Shown: piece by piece, positions 49,981 through 56,367 of the stretch
How the letters are laid out: every line of letters begins with the position of its first letter
Position numbering within the stretch: position 1 is the first letter of the stretch
IMG/VR virus record: IMGVR_UViG_3300043418_000072
Coordinates: 124,001 to 188,000 of that record
Length of the DNA: 64,000 nt
Reading direction: 5' to 3' (one strand)
Made by a program: the position numbers and the translations under genes
The notes under the pieces: model-generated
The model's input: the letters and a program-made list of their open reading frames with translations, nothing else
What the model was told of the DNA's origin: nothing
Databases searched by the model: none

Positions 49981-50265
49981 TTACTCGTTGTCCAAAATAG
50001 CGAAGATTTCTTCTTCCTTGATTACCAGCAGAGTTTCGCCCTTAACTGTTACAGTAATTGTGGCAGATGGATTGTACATCACGCGATCACCGACTTGCAC
50101 TGTAAGTGGGATGGGTGCGCCATCTTTAACGGGCTTGCCTGTGCCTACTGCTACAACTTCGGCTTCGTAAACCGGAGTTACTGAAGTAGTTAGCATAATG
50201 CCACCTGCGGATTTTGTTTCGGGTTCAAGTTTCTTGATTAGAACTCTGTCGTGCATTACTTGCAT
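49981..50265 (-). CDS. groES: Co-chaperonin GroES
   Basis: HDRVLIK, SAGGI, VVAVGTG, VQVGDRV, EEEIFAI. Confidence 0.95.
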   Translation of the reverse strand: MQVMHDRVLIKKLEPETKSAGGIMLTTSVTPVYEAEVVAVGTGKPVKDGAPIPLTVQVGDRVMYNPSATITVTVKGETLLVIKEEEIFAILDNE

Positions 50266-50280
50266 GTTATTTCCTTATTA

Positions 50281-50394
50281 ACCATAGTTAAGTACACTGC
50301 CGGAGTAGCAAGAACCAACTTGCCCACTTTGTTCCGTCCTGGATAGATTACTCTACTGGTTCCCAGGCAAACCGCTAATGTACTTAACTATGGT
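50281..50394 (-). ncRNA. Structured tRNA 3' trailer closed by a perfect 16-bp inverted repeat
   Basis: ACCATAGTTAAGTACA (50281-50296) / TGTACTTAACTATGGT (50379-50394); internal GNRA hairpin. Confidence 0.6.
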
Positions 50395-50465
50395 GCGCTA
50401 GGCGGGAATCGAACCCGCGATTCAGAGGTTTAGAAACTCCTGCTATACCATTTAGCTACTAGCGC
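50391..50465 (-). tRNA. tRNA with CUA anticodon (amber suppressor), CCA encoded
   Basis: 75-nt cloverleaf GCGCTAG...TT-CTA-AA...TTCGATT...CTAGCGC-A-CCA. Confidence 0.9.
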
Positions 50466-50473
50466 ATTTTGTA

Positions 50474-50502
50474 ATTATAACAAGAGCACTGATGTTAGTC
50501 AA
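50474..50502 (-). promoter_or_regulatory. sigma70-type promoter for the tRNA
   Basis: TTGACT-17-TATAAT. Confidence 0.85.
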
Positions 50503-50517: not shown

Positions 50518-51921
50518 TTATTTCATGCTGTTAGCACGAACTTGTTCGAAAGTGATTTCGTTAAACAATGCACCGTTCTGGAAAACAGTTTGCAATGCTT
50601 CAGTCCAACCACCAATGCCTTTGTCGCTCCAACCAGTAGGGGCTTGCACACTTGTTGAAAACTCGCCACCACTGTTGGTCCACAACTTAACACGGCCTTT
50701 GAGTGATGCTTTGCCACTGTCAGTGATGGGGTCTTTGTAAACATCAACCCATTCACCGTTGACACATGCACTGGAACATTTCATAGCCCACTTCTGTGTA
50801 TCACGATCAATAGCTTGCAGCAAAGCACCACCCATACCAAATGCAAAGTTATCTGCTGACCAACCTTGGAAATCAACCATAGTGCGCAAGATGCTTTGGA
50901 TGCTAACAGTGTTGATACCATCGCCCCAGATCATGCGTACATTGTTGAGTACCTTGTAGCCCTTGTCATTGGTAGTGTATCCAAAGCCTTCTGCAAGAAT
51001 TGCAATCATCTTTGGCATGACTTCAACAGGATCACCTGAGTCAGGACGGATAACAACTGTGGCACCTGAATCAATCACTTGCTGTTTCAAGTCACCAGTA
51101 CTCCACATTTTACATGCTTCGTAGATGTTGTAGCTGTCACTAACAACTGCAACAATACCGCCTGGCTTACCAAACTGTGTGACCATGTTGCTGTAGGCGT
51201 TCAGTTCACCTGCACGACCCCAACTAGTGATAGTACTGTGCTCGGCAGCTGGAATTGAAAAACCTGCGATGCCAGCATTGTAATATTCGCGAGCGTACAG
51301 TACACCAGTAATAGTGTCGGTACCCATGAAGTTGACCAAGTGGGCCGCACCCCCAATACCAGCACTCTCCATTGAAGATACACCACGAGCACCAAAATCG
51401 TGCAGTTTAAAACCGATAGTAGTAGGATCACCAGATTTCTCCAAGTATTCTTGCAAGATGTTTTTAATGTACTTGCTTTGTGTTGAGACTGTAGTTGGGT
51501 ACCAGACTGCACGAAGCAATGGAGTTTCCAACCATGTGGTTAAACCGTGGCACTTGGGGTCAGTGTTTTCGATTGTGACCAGTGCGTTTCCAACTGGGAC
51601 AACAGTGCCTTCTGGTACGGCTTTAATGACCACGGGCAAGTAGCCGTTGTGTGCTTCGACGATGTAGTCCCACATGGTGCGGTCGAATGGTTCGCCGTGT
51701 GCTGTGAGGATTTCTTCTGCGATGTCAACGTCGGCTTTTGTAATTGGGTCAAGTAAATACTCCTTGAAGAAAATTTGCAGTCCAACAACTTGTGTGAATG
51801 TGAATTTGCCGCCGCGGGCTGCAATGTAGCTGAATACATTAGTAGTGCCAGCTGGGTATTGAGGCGCCATACTAACTTTGTAGCTGTCAGTATTGAGAAT
51901 GATGTTTTTAGAGAGTTTCAT
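50518..51921 (-). CDS. nadV: Nicotinamide phosphoribosyltransferase
   Basis: TDSYK, LHDFGARG, AAEHS, VSDSY, IRPDSG. Confidence 0.95.
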   Translation of the reverse strand: MKLSKNIILNTDSYKVSMAPQYPAGTTNVFSYIAARGGKFTFTQVVGLQIFFKEYLLDPITKADVDIAEEILTAHGEPFDRTMWDYIVEAHNGYLPVVIKAVPEGTVVPVGNALVTIENTDPKCHGLTTWLETPLLRAVWYPTTVSTQSKYIKNILQEYLEKSGDPTTIGFKLHDFGARGVSSMESAGIGGAAHLVNFMGTDTITGVLYAREYYNAGIAGFSIPAAEHSTITSWGRAGELNAYSNMVTQFGKPGGIVAVVSDSYNIYEACKMWSTGDLKQQVIDSGATVVIRPDSGDPVEVMPKMIAILAEGFGYTTNDKGYKVLNNVRMIWGDGINTVSIQSILRTMVDFQGWSADNFAFGMGGALLQAIDRDTQKWAMKCSSACVNGEWVDVYKDPITDSGKASLKGRVKLWTNSGGEFSTSVQAPTGWSDKGIGGWTEALQTVFQNGALFNEITFEQVRANSMK

Positions 51922-52461: not shown

Positions 52462-52679
52462 TATAACTCCACTCTTTCAAAGTAAATCTTGGCAAAGCCC
52501 ATGGGGCTTGTTGCACGGCGTTCAATTTGTAGATACAAACGTGTCGGAGTATCCTCTAACACATGGTGCACCACAATCTGATCCATGGTATCGTTAAACA
52601 CTTGAGTCCTAACTTGTTCAGCTAAGAACAGTTGTTGACTACGCCGGGGTTGATAGTTGCTCTTGTGCATCTTAAACAC
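52461..52679 (-). CDS. Hypothetical protein
   Basis: Coupled ORF. Confidence 0.6.
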   Translation of the reverse strand: MFKMHKSNYQPRRSQQLFLAEQVRTQVFNDTMDQIVVHHVLEDTPTRLYLQIERRATSPMGFAKIYFERVEL

Positions 52680-53691
52680 CTACCGCCCATTGGACCATAT
52701 CGTAGTGGTCTTCAAAACACTCGTCGCTACGCACTTCTGCAATAGGAACCCAACGTGCTTTCTCTGCATCGTCACTGCCTTTTACTTTAGGCAATGCACC
52801 ATCAGGCAATTCAATCTTGTAGCAATGAGTAATGATACGACCACGTGGTGAACGATCAACAGCATCAAACACACGGTTGCCCGTAATGCTACCACGCAAC
52901 ACTGGCTCAGGTACTTTGATACCAGTTTCTTCACGGAGTTCGCGAATAGCTGCATCAAGTACGGTCTTGTCGGTGCTGGCGTTAACGTAACCACCAGGCA
53001 GTGCCCACAAGCCACGACCTGGCTCAGCACGGCGTTTGATCATAAGCACATGGCCTGAGCAAATTACTGCGGCATCTGCTGTGCTAAAGATTGGAGGGTA
53101 CTTCAAGCTGGCATATTGCTTGTTGTGTTCAATCAAGAATTCACGCTCACGGATAATCTGTGCAAATTCCTCAGTCTTACGAAAATTCATCAAGAAGTCA
53201 TAAGTTGATTGAGGTACAACATTCTTAATAAAGTTGCTGTTGAAGGTCCAGTTAAAGAACAGGTCACGAATGTTCACTGCACTAAGTGGTTCAATTTCCT
53301 CTACATCAACATAGCCCCATTGGGGGAACATGTCCAAGTAGAAACTTGATTCGTCTTTCTTGTGACCAATGATGGCAGTTTTAGTACCCAGGATTCGATA
53401 CTTGCTGACAATACCTTGCACACGAACTGCCCACGCTTGGTCGTTGTACATTGTATCAATGTTTTCTTCAATGTGAATACTCATTGCAAGACCACTTGTT
53501 GCAGCCTTAATCATTTGAGCACGTTCGGCACTGGTGAAGGGGTTTTTGTAAGTGCGGGGTTGAGCAGCTGAGCCTGTGATAATTACCAGATTGTCGGTCA
53601 ATGCTGTGGCTCGCTTGATAATCTCTAAGTGAGCATTGTGGAAGGGTTGAAAACGTCCGATGAGGACTAGTGTTCCGTATTCTTTAGACAT
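52672..53691 (-). CDS. nadM: Bifunctional NMN adenylyltransferase / Nudix ADPR pyrophosphatase
   Basis: GRFQPFHNAH, KNPF, Nudix box PGG...RELREETG. Confidence 0.95.
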   Translation of the reverse strand: MSKEYGTLVLIGRFQPFHNAHLEIIKRATALTDNLVIITGSAAQPRTYKNPFTSAERAQMIKAATSGLAMSIHIEENIDTMYNDQAWAVRVQGIVSKYRILGTKTAIIGHKKDESSFYLDMFPQWGYVDVEEIEPLSAVNIRDLFFNWTFNSNFIKNVVPQSTYDFLMNFRKTEEFAQIIREREFLIEHNKQYASLKYPPIFSTADAAVICSGHVLMIKRRAEPGRGLWALPGGYVNASTDKTVLDAAIRELREETGIKVPEPVLRGSITGNRVFDAVDRSPRGRIITHCYKIELPDGALPKVKGSDDAEKARWVPIAEVRSDECFEDHYDMVQWAVGV

Positions 53692-54618: not shown

Positions 54619-55587
54619 TTATTGTTTGCTTTTGATTAGTGATTGATGTGCAACCAACTGCTCTCTGAGTTGTGCAAATTGCGGATGCACTAGAATGTCC
54701 AATGCAGATTCAATGCTACGTAACGCGGTGTTGAATAATGCAGGCGCTAGATTGTAAATGGCTAGATATTTTGGACTGTTGGCAGTATGTGCAACAAAAG
54801 TACAGCGGGGATTGTTTTCAACTATCTCAACAAAGTACTTGGCCAACGAGTGTATGTCAACGATTGAGATATTTGTGAGAGTGATATGAAATTTTATTTG
54901 AACTGGCAAATCCACAAACTTAGTAATGTTATCTTGTACTATGGACCAGACTGTGCCCGTACGTTGCAGTTCTGCTGTTCGTCCTACTCCATCAATGCTG
55001 AGATTTAATGTTGTATTAAATTTCAGCAGCTTCTCAACAAATATTTGATTGTACACGCTTGCATTGGTGTAGACTCGCAAGTTAATGTCTGTTCTGTCTT
55101 TAGCTATCAAGTGATCTAGCAACTGATAGTAGTGCTTAATTATCATTGGCTCGCCACCAGTTAATGTAAGGAACTTTAGATTCTCTGACATGGTAAGTAT
55201 CTCGGCCCAGTCAGAATCTGAAACGGTATTAACTGAGCCATTGATGAGAGAGCTGTTTTCGCTATTGCACATCTTGCACTGAAAATTACAAAGATTGCTT
55301 GCTCTCAGCTCCATATAATCGAGTTGGTCAACGGTAGTTTCACCATATAGTGCAAGTAGGTGCTGTCTTATACTTTGCAGCCCTGCGTCTTCTAGTGACT
55401 TGCATCCTCCGCAAGTTTCGTCAAACTCGTTATTTAAAAACTTGGTTTTTAAATCTTTAAGGTAATCACTATTTCTAAACTCTACTGGACTCATGCTAAA
55501 CTTCTTAGAACTAATGCAGCACACAGCCGATTGATCGACATGGTAGAACAAAGATCGCCACGGTGCAGGACAAAAGAATTTTTTCAT
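54619..55587 (-). CDS. Radical SAM protein with N-terminal SPASM/twitch-like Cys cluster
   Basis: CNFQCKMC, TGGEPM, YTN, SIDG. Confidence 0.9.
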   Translation of the reverse strand: MKKFFCPAPWRSLFYHVDQSAVCCISSKKFSMSPVEFRNSDYLKDLKTKFLNNEFDETCGGCKSLEDAGLQSIRQHLLALYGETTVDQLDYMELRASNLCNFQCKMCNSENSSLINGSVNTVSDSDWAEILTMSENLKFLTLTGGEPMIIKHYYQLLDHLIAKDRTDINLRVYTNASVYNQIFVEKLLKFNTTLNLSIDGVGRTAELQRTGTVWSIVQDNITKFVDLPVQIKFHITLTNISIVDIHSLAKYFVEIVENNPRCTFVAHTANSPKYLAIYNLAPALFNTALRSIESALDILVHPQFAQLREQLVAHQSLIKSKQ

Positions 55588-55605
55588 AGAATAGAGTGTG
55601 TAATT

Positions 55606-55631
55606 AGAAAATAGGGGCCGAAGCCCCTATT
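55606..55631 (-). terminator. Terminator after tmRNA
   Basis: AATAGGGGC-TTCG-GCCCCTATT-TTCT. Confidence 0.85.
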
Positions 55632-55632
55632 A

Positions 55633-55953
55633 CTATTTCCTGTTGCAAGGCATAGCTGCCCCGGAAGCCTTTATCAGGCAACCATTAGAAACTGTGAGTC
55701 GTTTGCATTTACTTTTTTTGCTTCTACGGCCGGGAAACCCCAACCCTACGGCTTCTGCTTTGCCGAGCTGTCCACTTGTTTACTTGTTGCCCTGTCGAAA
55801 CCATGGCAGGCCCATCAAAAACATACTAAGCACTTTACACCGATATCGTTTCTTAAGTTCGCCCACGATGTATCGAATAGTACGCTTTTGGTGGACCTGG
55901 CGGGAGTCGAACCCGCGTCCAGAACACTTTTCTCTTTGCTTCATACAGCAATA
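55633..55953 (-). ncRNA. ssrA: Circularly permuted two-piece tmRNA; tag ANDSQFLMVA
   Basis: Acceptor piece ends ...GGGTTCGACTCCCGCCAGGTCCACCA (55889) before coding piece GGGCCTG... (55813); G3-U70; tag 55674-55706; ends approximate. Confidence 0.9.
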
Positions 55954-55980
55954 ACTTATATTATAGCACAAGACTATAAT

Positions 55981-56367
55981 TTAACGACCTGTAGTTGTCC
56001 AATCCAGCACAACTTCATCGGTGGTAGCATCTCGTAATTGGTAACGGCGTTCAATTCCTGATGCTTGCTGAAAAGAAGCAACAGTAGTGGACTCGCCATC
56101 GACATGTGCTTGAGCTTGATTTTCTAACGCCAGTTCGTCGAAACATTTGTTAAACTGCTCAACTGATTCAAACATCATAGTTACTGTAGTGACTACAGAT
56201 CCATCAGGCATGTCAGCTCGTGTAGTGACATTTAACTCAGATCCGGGTGCGCTATACTTTGCAATTATTGCATCACGTGCATCATACACATGCTTGAATT
56301 CCGGGCGGTGTAGTGGTCTAACTGCCCCAGCTGGTGTAGTAATTTCTTTAATATACTTGATCATCAA
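55981..56367 (-). CDS. Hypothetical protein
   Basis: TAAATA at 56384-56389, GGAG RBS. Confidence 0.75.
   Translation of the reverse strand: MMIKYIKEITTPAGAVRPLHRPEFKHVYDARDAIIAKYSAPGSELNVTTRADMPDGSVVTTVTMMFESVEQFNKCFDELALENQAQAHVDGESTTVASFQQASGIERRYQLRDATTDEVVLDWTTTGR

What the first reader, a model, noticed from the sequence alone, without database searches (positions are those of the whole stretch)
50281..50394. Structured RNA that pairs with the suppressor tRNA's CCA end
Seen: in the transcript, ACCA+UAGUUAAGUACA pairs perfectly (16 bp) with UGUACUUAACUAUGGU 82 nt later. Inside are UAGA-GUAA-UCUA (GNRA), CUGG/CCAG, GCAAG-UUGGUU-CUUGC, and a possible kissing pair GAACCA/UGGUUC. Known: HDV-like theta ribozymes follow phage tRNAs, including suppressors, but this sequence does not fit their G1-start pattern by eye. 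Inferred: a new element gating 3' maturation of the suppressor, and possibly groES translation just downstream.
Basis: partly seen in the sequence, partly recalled or inferred. Interest (0 to 1): 0.78.

Follow-up and report, generated by a model that had tools for sequence, protein, structure and literature searches.

The report
Phage tRNA-tail stalk-and-head RNA module
The hairpin that pairs with the suppressor tRNA's CCA tail is real, but it is one member of a large, apparently undescribed family of exchangeable "stalk-and-head" RNA modules that follow many different tRNAs in uncultured phages, so it is not specific to suppressors.

Summary
On the minus strand, the tRNA's A73-CCA plus 14 trailer bases pair with the last 18 bases of a 114-nt element (window 50281-50394; MFE -49 kcal/mol, z = -5.5). 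The element is not an HDV-like/theta ribozyme and matches no Rfam family.

It is also not suppressor-specific. The same 354-kb phage has two more such elements after tRNA-Lys(UUU). About 70 further unique examples follow other tRNAs in IMG/VR contigs, mainly Lys-UUU, Glu-UUC, Gln, Leu-UAG and Tyr.

All share a roughly 19-bp AU-rich stalk that starts exactly at the discriminator base. The stalk shows many compensatory changes, and G.U pairs outnumber A.C by 97 to 19 on the tRNA-sense strand, so it is selected as RNA. The enclosed "heads" (about 25-190 nt) are structured but mostly unrelated to each other.

The suppressor-type head is 99-100% identical in five backgrounds whose tRNA and groES have diverged by about 20%. 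It is replaced by another head in closer relatives and absent in others, so the module behaves as an exchangeable cassette.

Best reading (inferred): a co-transcribed double-stranded processing or insulator stalk, cut by host RNase III or E between the tRNA and groES. No cleavage, gating of tRNA maturation or control of groES translation is shown.

The parts
50474..50502 (-). Sigma-70-type promoter TTGACT-17-TATAAT (TG-extended). It would start transcription within a few nt of tRNA position 1.
   Evidence: 11 of 12 matches; sequence.
50391..50465 (-). tRNA with anticodon CUA (amber suppressor type), with encoded A73-CCA. The last four bases (50391-50394) are also the first four of the stalk.
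   Evidence: ARAGORN; Rfam tRNA 66.7 bits.
50281..50394 (-). The whole 114-nt stalk-and-head module (the finding).
50377..50394 (-). 5' arm of the stalk: ACCAUAGUUAAGUACAUU (N73-CCA plus 14 nt of trailer).
   Evidence: MFE structure; family stalk table.
50281..50298 (-). 3' arm of the stalk: AGUGUACUUAACUAUGGU. The terminal UGGU pairs with ACCA.
   Evidence: The last base covaries with N73 across the family.
50299..50376 (-). The 'head': a three-way junction with a GNRA-capped arm and a CAAG-UUGGUU-CUUG arm.
   Evidence: Invariant in five backgrounds except the GNRA loop.
50343..50356 (-). GUAGA-GUAA-UCUAU hairpin. Loop positions 50349-50350 are the only variable columns inside the element (GUAA, GCGA, GCAA).
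50357..50362 (-). GAACCA internal loop, candidate partner of UGGUUC (untested).
   Evidence: Sequence only; no variation to test.
50308..50323 (-). GCAAG-UUGGUU-CUUGC hairpin whose loop holds UGGUUC (50312-50317).
50266..50280 (-). 15-nt spacer with Shine-Dalgarno AAGGA (50272-50276). It lies outside the stalk and is unpaired in the fold.
49981..50265 (-). groES (Cpn10) gene, co-transcribed downstream. No minus-strand terminator separates it from the tRNA.
   Evidence: Pfam PF00166 E=1.6e-23.

Best explanation
The element is the suppressor-tRNA copy of a widespread family of phage RNA modules. Each module begins at the discriminator base of a tRNA. It closes a roughly 19-bp, AU/GU-rich stalk over the tRNA's NCCA tail and the first ~15 nt of trailer, and it encloses a variable structured head.

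Shown:
- The helix is selected at the RNA level on the tRNA-sense strand.
- Its boundary is the NCCA tail.
- Heads are structured and come in many unrelated classes.
- The module is present, absent or swapped at the same site in related phages.
- Here it is co-transcribed from one promoter with tRNA-Sup and groES.

Inferred mechanism: the stalk is a double-stranded processing or insulator signal. After transcription the tRNA's acceptor/T stack and the stalk form one long rod, and the CCA end is unusable until a host endonuclease cuts. The cut could be RNase III in the stalk, as between the E. coli metY tRNA and its downstream mRNA. It could also be RNase E at the conserved CCA-UAU, as when it removes the terminator hairpins of E. 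coli tRNA-Pro. Exonucleases then trim back to the CCA.

The same cuts would separate the tRNA from groES mRNA (or from the next tRNA) and release the head as a stem-closed small RNA. The stalk probably also serves as the unit by which heads are exchanged between co-infecting phages.
For: (1) The structure is real and non-random.

(2) Family:
- Two more copies follow tRNA-Lys(UUU) in the same genome.
- A pattern scan of IMG/VR found the long stalk in about 70 of 90 loci.
- Of 1053 tRNAs in the fetched loci, 109 (84 unique) carry it.
- 67 of 129 long perfect inverted repeats in ~800 kb of these loci are CCA-anchored.

(3) RNA-level selection:
- Positions 4-18 are 97% paired, against 78% when partners are shuffled.
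- There are dozens of both-side changes.
- G.U outnumbers A.C by 97 to 19 in the filtered set of 72 and by 163 to 35 in all 84.

(4) Boundary at N73: 65 of 73 are paired at N73, 36 of 73 at nt 72, and 19 of 73 at nt 71. The terminal pair switches from A-U to U-A or G.U within one head class when the tRNA differs.

(5) Heads are structured: compensatory changes occur in three head classes.

(6) Cassette behaviour:
- tRNA-Sup abuts groES with no element in L007-L009.
- L004 and L005 have a different head although their groES is 90% identical.
- L006, L341 and L342 have a 99-100% identical head although groES is only 76-82% and the tRNA ~80% nt identical.

(7) One transcription unit: there is a promoter and no terminator. 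Metatranscriptome contigs bridge tRNA-element and element-groES, although DNA carry-over is not excluded.

(8) Position between cistrons: 16 of 72 stalks overlap G1-G2 of the next tRNA, and 12 more end 3-9 nt before it.

(9) Precedents: RNase E cutting right after CCA to remove a hairpin (PMC5291269), and RNase III cutting between the metY tRNA and its mRNA (PMC5371410). The Rfam permuted-tmRNA consensus, and this phage's own tmRNA, have an excised CCA-to-G1 hairpin of the same logic.
Against: - No cleavage site is mapped. The only metatranscriptome with good depth covers groES and NAMPT but not the tRNA or element.
- RNase III has little sequence specificity, so it does not explain why the stalk sequence (CCAUAUWRAARYACAYU) is conserved, rather than only its pairing.
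- RNase E needs single-stranded RNA, and the conserved UAU is inside the helix.
- Most tRNAs in the same arrays do without a stalk, so it is not needed for tRNA maturation in general.
- A plain processing role does not explain the strong preference for Lys-UUU, Glu-UUC, Gln, Leu-UAG and suppressor tRNAs.
- It also does not explain the diversity of structured heads.
- The phage encodes no RNase III of its own.
Confidence: 0.42

Rival explanations
1. Selfish mobile hairpin element (MITE-like). It inserts at the TA of the CCA-TA-TGG junction that follows tRNAs and is merely tolerated. The RNA hairpin is a by-product or a way of being harmless.
For: - Presence, absence and replacement at one site, and identical copies in diverged backgrounds.
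- Tandem arrays.
- Conserved termini with TA...TA just inside the CCA/TGG.
- The plain inter-tRNA spacer in these phages is often CCA-tat-GG, which is the putative empty target.
- Neisseria Correia elements are a precedent for TA-flanked inverted-repeat elements whose transcripts are RNase III hairpins (PMC2649163).
Against: - Many compensatory arm changes and a 5:1 excess of G.U over A.C on one strand point to selection on RNA pairing, not on two transposase-binding ends.
- Interiors are mostly unrelated (53 of 72 are singletons), unlike copies of a master MITE.
- There are only three copies in 354 kb, all after tRNAs.
- The last base tracks the discriminator.
- The stalk position after Lys-UUU or Glu is conserved across many loci.
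- No Y1, TnpB, IS630-type DDE or RT gene is in the genome.
Confidence: 0.22
2. CCA-masking switch. The stalk keeps particular tRNAs (Lys-UUU, Glu, Gln, suppressor) uncharged or hidden until a regulated cut. This would time suppression or shield the tRNA's 3' end from host nucleases or toxins.
For: - The helix starts exactly at N73 and covaries with it, like the UGGN/NCCA contact of T-box RNAs.
- There is a strong preference for a few tRNA types, several of which are classic anticodon-nuclease targets; that link is my own background knowledge.
- tRNA-Sup in front of groES is conserved in eight relatives.
Against: - Relatives with the same tRNA-Sup and groES lack any element.
- There is no sign that the phage recodes TAG. 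TAG ends 12 of 188 long ORFs and the read-through extensions are short.
- No regulator or ligand-binding signature is known.
- The heads differ completely between copies behind the same tRNA type.
Confidence: 0.15
3. The head is the product. The stalk is a processing stalk (as for rRNA) that delivers diverse small structured RNAs, such as tRNA mimics, decoys or anti-defence RNAs, from tRNA operons.
For: - Heads show compensatory changes.
- 9 of 72 carry a T-arm-like GGUUCRANUCC stacked on the stalk like a tRNA with a 19-bp acceptor stem.
- The suppressor-type head is invariant apart from its GNRA loop.
- T4 has stable tRNA-like RNAs (rnaC, rnaD) of unknown function in its tRNA cluster.
- GOLLD RNA sits in one of these clusters.
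Against: - Head classes share no motif and match no Rfam family.
- The shortest heads are about 25 nt.
- Invariance of the suppressor-type head is equally explained by recent transfer.
Confidence: 0.15
4. A self-cleaving ribozyme that frees the tRNA 3' end, either theta/HDV-like or of a new class.
For: Same genomic position as theta ribozymes, directly after phage tRNAs that include suppressors (PMC10879173). The suppressor-type head is highly conserved.
Against: - No hit to any ribozyme family at E<=10.
- The 5' end pairs with the 3' end in an uninterrupted 18-bp helix, which excludes the P1/P2 nested double pseudoknot.
- Only the stalk is conserved across the family and it has no internal loop. 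Heads are unrelated, and some are only about 25 nt.
- Theta-associated tRNAs mostly lack an encoded CCA (4.5% have one), whereas all of these have it.
Confidence: 0.04
5. Intrinsic terminator or attenuator derived from the bidirectional terminators that follow some bacterial tRNAs.
For: In bacterial genomes the same search pattern finds 42-49-nt terminator-like hairpins whose A- and U-tracts pair down to the CCA, for example CCAUAUAAAAAUAC-[GC stem]-GUAUUUUUAUAUGG. This resembles the outer stalk.
Against: - There is no G+C-rich stem followed by a U-run on the minus strand here.
- Genes or tRNAs follow within 0-15 nt and lack their own promoter in many cases.
- The 3' arm here (AGUGUACUUAACUAUGGU) is not U-rich.
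Confidence: 0.03

Closest known systems
Intervening segment of permuted (two-piece) tmRNA precursors (Rfam RF04321, RF01850)
   Same: A hairpin that begins with the CCA tail of one RNA piece and ends just before G1 of the next, and is removed during maturation. The Rfam consensus shows ACCA + A-rich ... U-rich + GG. This phage's own tmRNA (window ~55812-55894, minus strand) has an 83-nt version with a 13-bp AU/GU stalk.
   Different: In tmRNA the hairpin extends the acceptor stem of the same tRNA-like domain. Here the 3' arm leads into a different gene. The tRNA modules have a longer, sequence-conserved stalk and large structured heads.
RNase III site between the metY tRNA and the rimP-nusA-infB mRNA in E. 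coli; RNase E removal of terminator hairpins right after the CCA of tRNA-Pro
   Same: The layout promoter-tRNA-hairpin-mRNA. An endonuclease cut in or at the hairpin frees the tRNA and sets the fate of the downstream mRNA (PMC5371410, citing Regnier and Grunberg-Manago 1989; PMC5291269).
   Different: Those hairpins do not pair with the CCA itself, are not a conserved family, carry no structured head and are not exchangeable. No cleavage has been shown here.
Correia repeat-enclosed elements (CREE/NEMIS) of Neisseria
   Same: Elements of about 100-150 bp with inverted-repeat ends and TA at both borders. They are co-transcribed with neighbours, fold into hairpins bound or cut by RNase III, and vary in presence between strains (PMC2649163).
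   Different: CREE have conserved interiors, hundreds of dispersed copies and no tRNA-end specificity. Here the interiors are unrelated, copies are few, every copy starts at an NCCA, and the arms evolve by RNA-style compensation.
HDV-like theta ribozymes after phage tRNAs (PMC10879173)
   Same: They lie directly 3' of phage tRNAs, including suppressors, and have a proposed role in 3'-trailer removal.
   Different: The fold topology differs. There is no CM match. The theta-associated tRNAs mostly lack an encoded CCA and come from gut phages of Bacteroidota and Bacillota, whereas these are freshwater phages whose CCA is always encoded and paired.
T4 stable RNAs species 1 and 2 (rnaC, rnaD)
   Same: Small structured, partly tRNA-like RNAs of unknown function, embedded in and co-transcribed with a phage tRNA cluster. 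rnaC has a T-arm next to its paired ends.
   Different: They have no long stalk over the preceding CCA and no sequence similarity.
T-box riboswitch UGGN-NCCA contact
   Same: A UGGN that pairs with the tRNA's NCCA, with N tracking the discriminator.
   Different: Here the contact is in cis and is simply the base of a long helix. There is no stem I, specifier or antiterminator, and no Rfam T-box hit.

Membership tests
HDV-like / theta ribozyme | Nested double pseudoknot (P1, P1.1, P2, P3, optional P4), with the cleavage site at the 5' end of P1 | tested here: not met
   The first 18 nt pair with the last 18 nt as one uninterrupted closing helix. No HDV-type covariance model matches at E<=10.
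HDV-like / theta ribozyme | Associated tRNAs usually lack an encoded CCA (4.5% have one) | tested here: not met
   The CCA is encoded and paired in all family members.
HDV-like / theta ribozyme | Self-cleavage in vitro | not testable with these tools
   Needs a bench assay.
Any Rfam 15 family | Covariance-model score at or near the gathering threshold | tested here: not met
   There are no hits over the element or over other heads. Only weak chance hits appear (DUF2815 14.7 bits against 41.2, and tmRNA_permuted 14.3 bits caused by the tRNA T-arm).
MITE / Correia-like transposable element | Terminal inverted repeats flanked by a duplicated TA | tested here: inconclusive
   TA at stalk positions 4-5 is mirrored at the 3' end in 75 of 84, but this cannot be told apart from helix conservation. 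The known empty sites (L007: CCA-TA-TATTGAGG; L009: CCA-AAGG) do not contain the TGGT that follows filled sites.
MITE / Correia-like transposable element | Many dispersed copies with a conserved interior, and a cognate transposase | tested here: not met
   There are three copies in 354 kb, all after tRNAs, with unrelated interiors. 53 of 72 heads are singletons. No Y1, TnpB, DDE_3 or RT is present; other transposase families were not searched.
Intrinsic (Rho-independent) terminator | G+C-rich stem followed directly by a U-run | tested here: not met
   No minus-strand terminator-like site lies between the tRNA and groES. The 3' arm is not U-rich.
RNase III processing stalk | About two turns of mostly regular dsRNA between cistrons | tested here: met
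   The stalk here is 18 bp, and 19 bp across the family with over 95% pairing. It lies between tRNA and mRNA or between two tRNAs.
RNase III processing stalk | Staggered cleavage of both arms by RNase III | not testable with these tools
   The metatranscriptome contigs gave no usable ends. The phage has no RNase III gene of its own.
Bacterial Y RNA (YrlA) / Ro system | Ro (TROVE) protein partner and a YrlA-like tRNA mimic on a terminal stem | tested here: not met
   There is no TROVE domain in the genome and no Rfam match. Where a T-arm is present it abuts the 3' strand as in a normal tRNA, not in the permuted order I recall for YrlA (background knowledge).
T-box leader | Stem I/specifier plus an antiterminator bulge UGGN | tested here: not met
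   Only the UGGN-NCCA pairing is shared. There is no T-box model hit.
Permuted-tmRNA intervening segment | Lies between the CCA of the acceptor piece and G1 of the coding piece of one tmRNA | tested here: not met
   The element follows an ordinary tRNA and precedes groES. The real tmRNA of the window is at 55583-55981. The resemblance is in how it works, not in family membership.

The most novel reading that the evidence does not exclude
A previously unrecognised class of modular phage RNA. A sequence-conserved helix clamps the CCA end of selected tRNAs (Lys-UUU, Glu-UUC, Gln-UUG, Leu-UAG, amber suppressor). It serves as a docking and exchange platform for fast-evolving structured 'head' RNAs. 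The heads would be the active parts, for example decoys or inhibitors aimed at host tRNA-targeting defences or tRNA-modifying and tRNA-processing enzymes. They would be swapped between phages as cassettes by a dedicated, still unknown, CCA-end-specific mechanism.
Probability: 0.2. Interest if true: 0.85.

Novelty: new variant of a known kind. Interest (0 to 1): 0.62.

Why it matters
Phage tRNA arrays are usually read as plain gene lists. In these uncultured, apparently mostly freshwater phages about one tRNA in ten carries a conserved RNA clamp on its CCA end, with a structured and rapidly changing cargo.

If the stalk is a processing signal, it defines how large phages cut tRNA-mRNA co-transcripts using host enzymes. 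That is a question where 3'-end maturation is still poorly understood.

If the heads are active RNAs, the family is a large reservoir of undescribed structured RNAs. It would also be a natural scaffold (paired termini next to a tRNA) for expressing stable RNAs.

The preference for the tRNAs that host anticodon nucleases attack makes a link to the phage-host conflict over tRNAs directly testable. For annotation, the stalk consensus gives a simple way to find these modules.

Tried and rejected
- **Rfam.** Gathering and E<=10 scans of the window, the two Lys copies, the tmRNA and seven related loci matched no family over any element.
- **Theta/HDV-like ribozyme.** Rejected on topology, CCA status and the lack of a CM hit.
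- **GenBank phages.** blastn found only an unrelated tRNA-Gly for the region and nothing for a consensus-like family member. The closest cultured phage by NAMPT, Ralstonia phage RsoM2USA at 58.7%, has no annotated tRNA after NAMPT and is not syntenic.
- **17-mer scan for the 5' arm.** Three hits inside coding sequence (L012-L014) were chance matches.
- **Exact 20-mer head scan of metagenomes.** It gave two more backgrounds, both again near-identical, so covariation inside the suppressor-type head cannot be assessed.
- **Reads.** Only assembled contigs were available. The one deep metatranscriptome skips the tRNA and element, so no RNA ends could be read.
- **Partner proteins in the phage.** No TROVE, RNase III, Y1 transposase, TnpB, DDE_3, reverse transcriptase, CCA-adding enzyme or Rnl2-type ligase was found.
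- **Shared UGGUU/AACCA loop-loop motif among heads.** It occurs in only three independent classes, so it is not a family feature.
- **TAG recoding of the phage.** Not supported.
- **Identity of the suppressor.** No clear parent tRNA; the best match is 73% to several types.
- **Bacterial genomes.** About eight are short terminator-like hairpins.

Full report
**What is there**

The window is part of a 354,098-bp virus record with 43.5% G+C. The record has 48 tRNA genes clustered at 280-303 kb, plus a lone tRNA(CUA) and a permuted tmRNA inside the window.

On the minus strand the order is as follows:
- a nicotinamide phosphoribosyltransferase gene (50518-51921);
- a near-consensus promoter, TTGACT-17-TATAAT (50502-50474);
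- the tRNA (50465-50391, with encoded CCA);
- the 114-nt element (50394-50281);
- a 15-nt spacer with AAGGA;
- groES (50265-49981).

No minus-strand terminator lies between the tRNA and groES, so all three are one transcription unit.

**Checking the observation**

- The 16-bp perfect complementarity is exact.
- The fold extends it to 18 pairs and gives -49 kcal/mol, with z = -5.5 against shuffles.
- Genome-wide, only two inverted repeats with a 30-400 nt spacer have arms of 16 bp or more. Both begin at a tRNA's CCA.

**It is not a known RNA**

No Rfam family matches at E<=10. An HDV-like fold is excluded by topology, because the 5' end pairs with the 3' end in an unbroken helix. Theta ribozymes also accompany tRNAs that mostly lack an encoded CCA.

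**It is not suppressor-specific**

- Reading every tRNA trailer in the genome showed two further elements of the same build after the two tRNA-Lys(UUU) genes. They lie at genome 293326-293456 and 293145-293243, which is L223 427-557 and 246-344.
- A pattern of T-loop + NCCA + UANNNRARUAC returned 90 IMG/VR loci. In about 70 of them the NCCA and trailer pair with a segment 65-228 nt downstream.
- Across all fetched loci, 109 of 1053 tRNAs (84 unique) carry such a stalk.
- Half of all long perfect inverted repeats in these loci are CCA-anchored.
- In one-per-species bacterial and archaeal genomes the same pattern gave mostly chance hits or short terminator-like hairpins. Only two were long elements.
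- GenBank phages gave nothing.

**Anatomy of the family**

- The stalk is about 19 bp, with consensus NCCAUAUWRAARYACAYU paired to ARUGURYUUYWAUAUGGN.
- Positions 4-18 are 97% paired, against 78% when the partner arms are swapped between elements. Most positions show both-side changes.
- G.U pairs outnumber A.C by about 5 to 1 on the tRNA-sense strand. This is what an RNA helix on that strand predicts, and not what a DNA site would predict.
- Pairing begins sharply at the discriminator: 65 of 73 at N73, 36 of 73 at nt 72, and chance level beyond.
- The last base follows the discriminator: A-U, G.U, and U-A for U73 tRNAs. This holds within a single head class.
- Heads are diverse. 53 of 72 are singletons by blastn.
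- Where several members of a head class exist, their inner helices show compensatory changes.
- Nine heads have a T-arm-like hairpin stacked on the stalk.

**Distribution**

- Stalks are strongly preferred after Lys-UUU (15 of 28 unique tRNAs), Glu-UUC (19 of 38), the CUA suppressor (4 of 8), Leu-UAG and Gln-UUG.
- None follows Met (65), Asp (45), His, Ile, Cys, Val or Pro.
- The preference also holds for the 23 stalks that were not used to find the loci. Shared ancestry of the loci is not controlled for.
- About 40% of stalks end at, or within 9 nt of, the next tRNA. In 16 cases the last GGN of the stalk is G1-G2-N3 of that tRNA.

**Cassette behaviour at the suppressor site**

tRNA(CUA) directly upstream of groES is conserved in eight relatives found via groES, whose groES is down to 42% identical. 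Two further metagenome contigs, L341 and L342, carry the same tRNA-plus-element arrangement. Across these ten loci:
- Three have no element, with only 10-15 nt between the CCA and the ATG.
- Two close relatives (groES 90% identical) have a different 123-nt head, followed by one or more further modules.
- The 114-nt head of the window occurs unchanged, or with changes only in the two middle bases of the GNRA loop and the last base. This holds in backgrounds whose groES is 76-93% and whose tRNA is about 80-100% nt identical.
- The 123-nt head also sits behind a tRNA-Glu next to a tmRNA gene.
- A 131-nt head sits behind Tyr, Thr and Arg tRNAs.

Divergence resumes within a few bases of both ends of the element. 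The unit that moves is therefore the module itself. How it moves is unknown. No transposase of the families tested, and no reverse transcriptase, is encoded.

**How it most likely works**

Shown: the RNA-level helix over the NCCA, the structured heads, co-transcription, and exchangeability.

Inferred: the stalk is a double-stranded processing or insulator signal. Three precedents support this.
- RNase III cuts a hairpin between the E. coli metY tRNA and its downstream mRNA. This frees the tRNA and starts decay of the mRNA.
- RNase E cuts immediately after the CCA of the three tRNA-Pro transcripts and removes the whole hairpin. Its loose consensus (A/G)N|AU fits the conserved A76-U|AU.
- Permuted tmRNA precursors carry an excised hairpin from the CCA to G1. 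This phage's tmRNA has an expanded one.

The model does not explain the conserved stalk sequence, the tRNA preference or the head diversity, so my confidence in it is moderate.

groES translation control is unlikely. The Shine-Dalgarno lies outside the helix, and relatives with empty sites have the same arrangement.

**Rivals**

- A purely selfish MITE-like element. It is weakened by the RNA-type covariation and the unrelated interiors.
- A CCA-masking switch.
- Heads as the real products.
- A new ribozyme.
- A terminator.

The report sections give the evidence for and against each.

**Limits**

- No RNA ends could be read, because only contigs were available and the one deep metatranscriptome skips the region.
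- The loci were found with a pattern that demands CCAUA and a common T-loop, so family frequencies and the consensus are biased towards that form.
- Copies are related by descent, so the counts are not independent events.
- The loop-loop contact in the suppressor-type head is untested.

Noticed in passing
window 55583-55981 (-), intervening hairpin ~55812-55894: The phage encodes a permuted (two-piece, beta-type) tmRNA with tag ANDSQFLMVA. Its CCA-to-G1 intervening segment is an expanded 83-nt hairpin with a 13-bp AU/GU stalk, built on the same logic as the tRNA modules. Relatives L004, L005 and L042 also carry permuted tmRNAs, and in L042 the tmRNA directly follows a tRNA-Glu module.
   Followed up: partly
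genome 293145-293243 and 293326-293456 (locus L223 246-344 and 427-557, minus strand): Two more stalk-and-head modules lie outside the window, each after a tRNA-Lys(UUU). Both have a T-arm-like GGUUCGAUUCC hairpin stacked on the stalk, giving a tRNA-like shape with a 19-20-bp 'acceptor'.
   Followed up: partly
window 50391-50465 (-) and loci L002-L009: An amber-suppressor-type tRNA directly upstream of groES is conserved across relatives whose groES is down to 42% identical. Yet the genome shows no sign of TAG reassignment: TAG ends 12 of 188 long ORFs and the extensions are short. The tRNA has no clear parent type. What the suppressor is for is open.
   Followed up: partly
window 50518-51921 (-), 52672-53691 (-), 54619-55587 (-): An NAD-salvage pair sits upstream of the tRNA: NAMPT, and a cytidylyltransferase-like + NUDIX protein of NadR/NMNAT type. 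A radical-SAM protein lies nearby.
   Followed up: no
genome 280-303 kb tRNA cluster (outside the window), e.g. trailers of tRNA-Pro 301134, tRNA-Thr 300703, tRNA-Gln 295413: Several gaps between annotated tRNAs contain T-arm-like sequences ending in CCA that ARAGORN does not call. They may be odd tRNAs, tRNA-like RNAs or decayed genes. Locus L034 has five modules alternating with ~100-nt RNAs that end in CCA but are not recognisable tRNAs.
   Followed up: no
L037 407-872 (-): A GOLLD RNA (219.9 bits), with a tRNA inside it, lies in the same tRNA cluster as two stalk modules. These phages collect several kinds of large structured RNA next to tRNAs.
   Followed up: no
window 50244: In metatranscriptome run X3 the groES contig (49849-50244, word depth ~35) ends 21 nt inside the ORF, directly joined to Illumina adapter sequence. 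This may mark a discrete RNA end, or may only reflect short inserts.
   Followed up: no
loci L145, L176, L192, L197, L199, L210, L216 (bacterial genomes): Some bacterial tRNAs are followed by 42-49-nt terminator-like hairpins whose A- and U-tracts pair all the way down to the CCA (CCAUAUAAAAAUAC...GUAUUUUUAUAUGG). These are a possible evolutionary source of the phage stalk.
   Followed up: no
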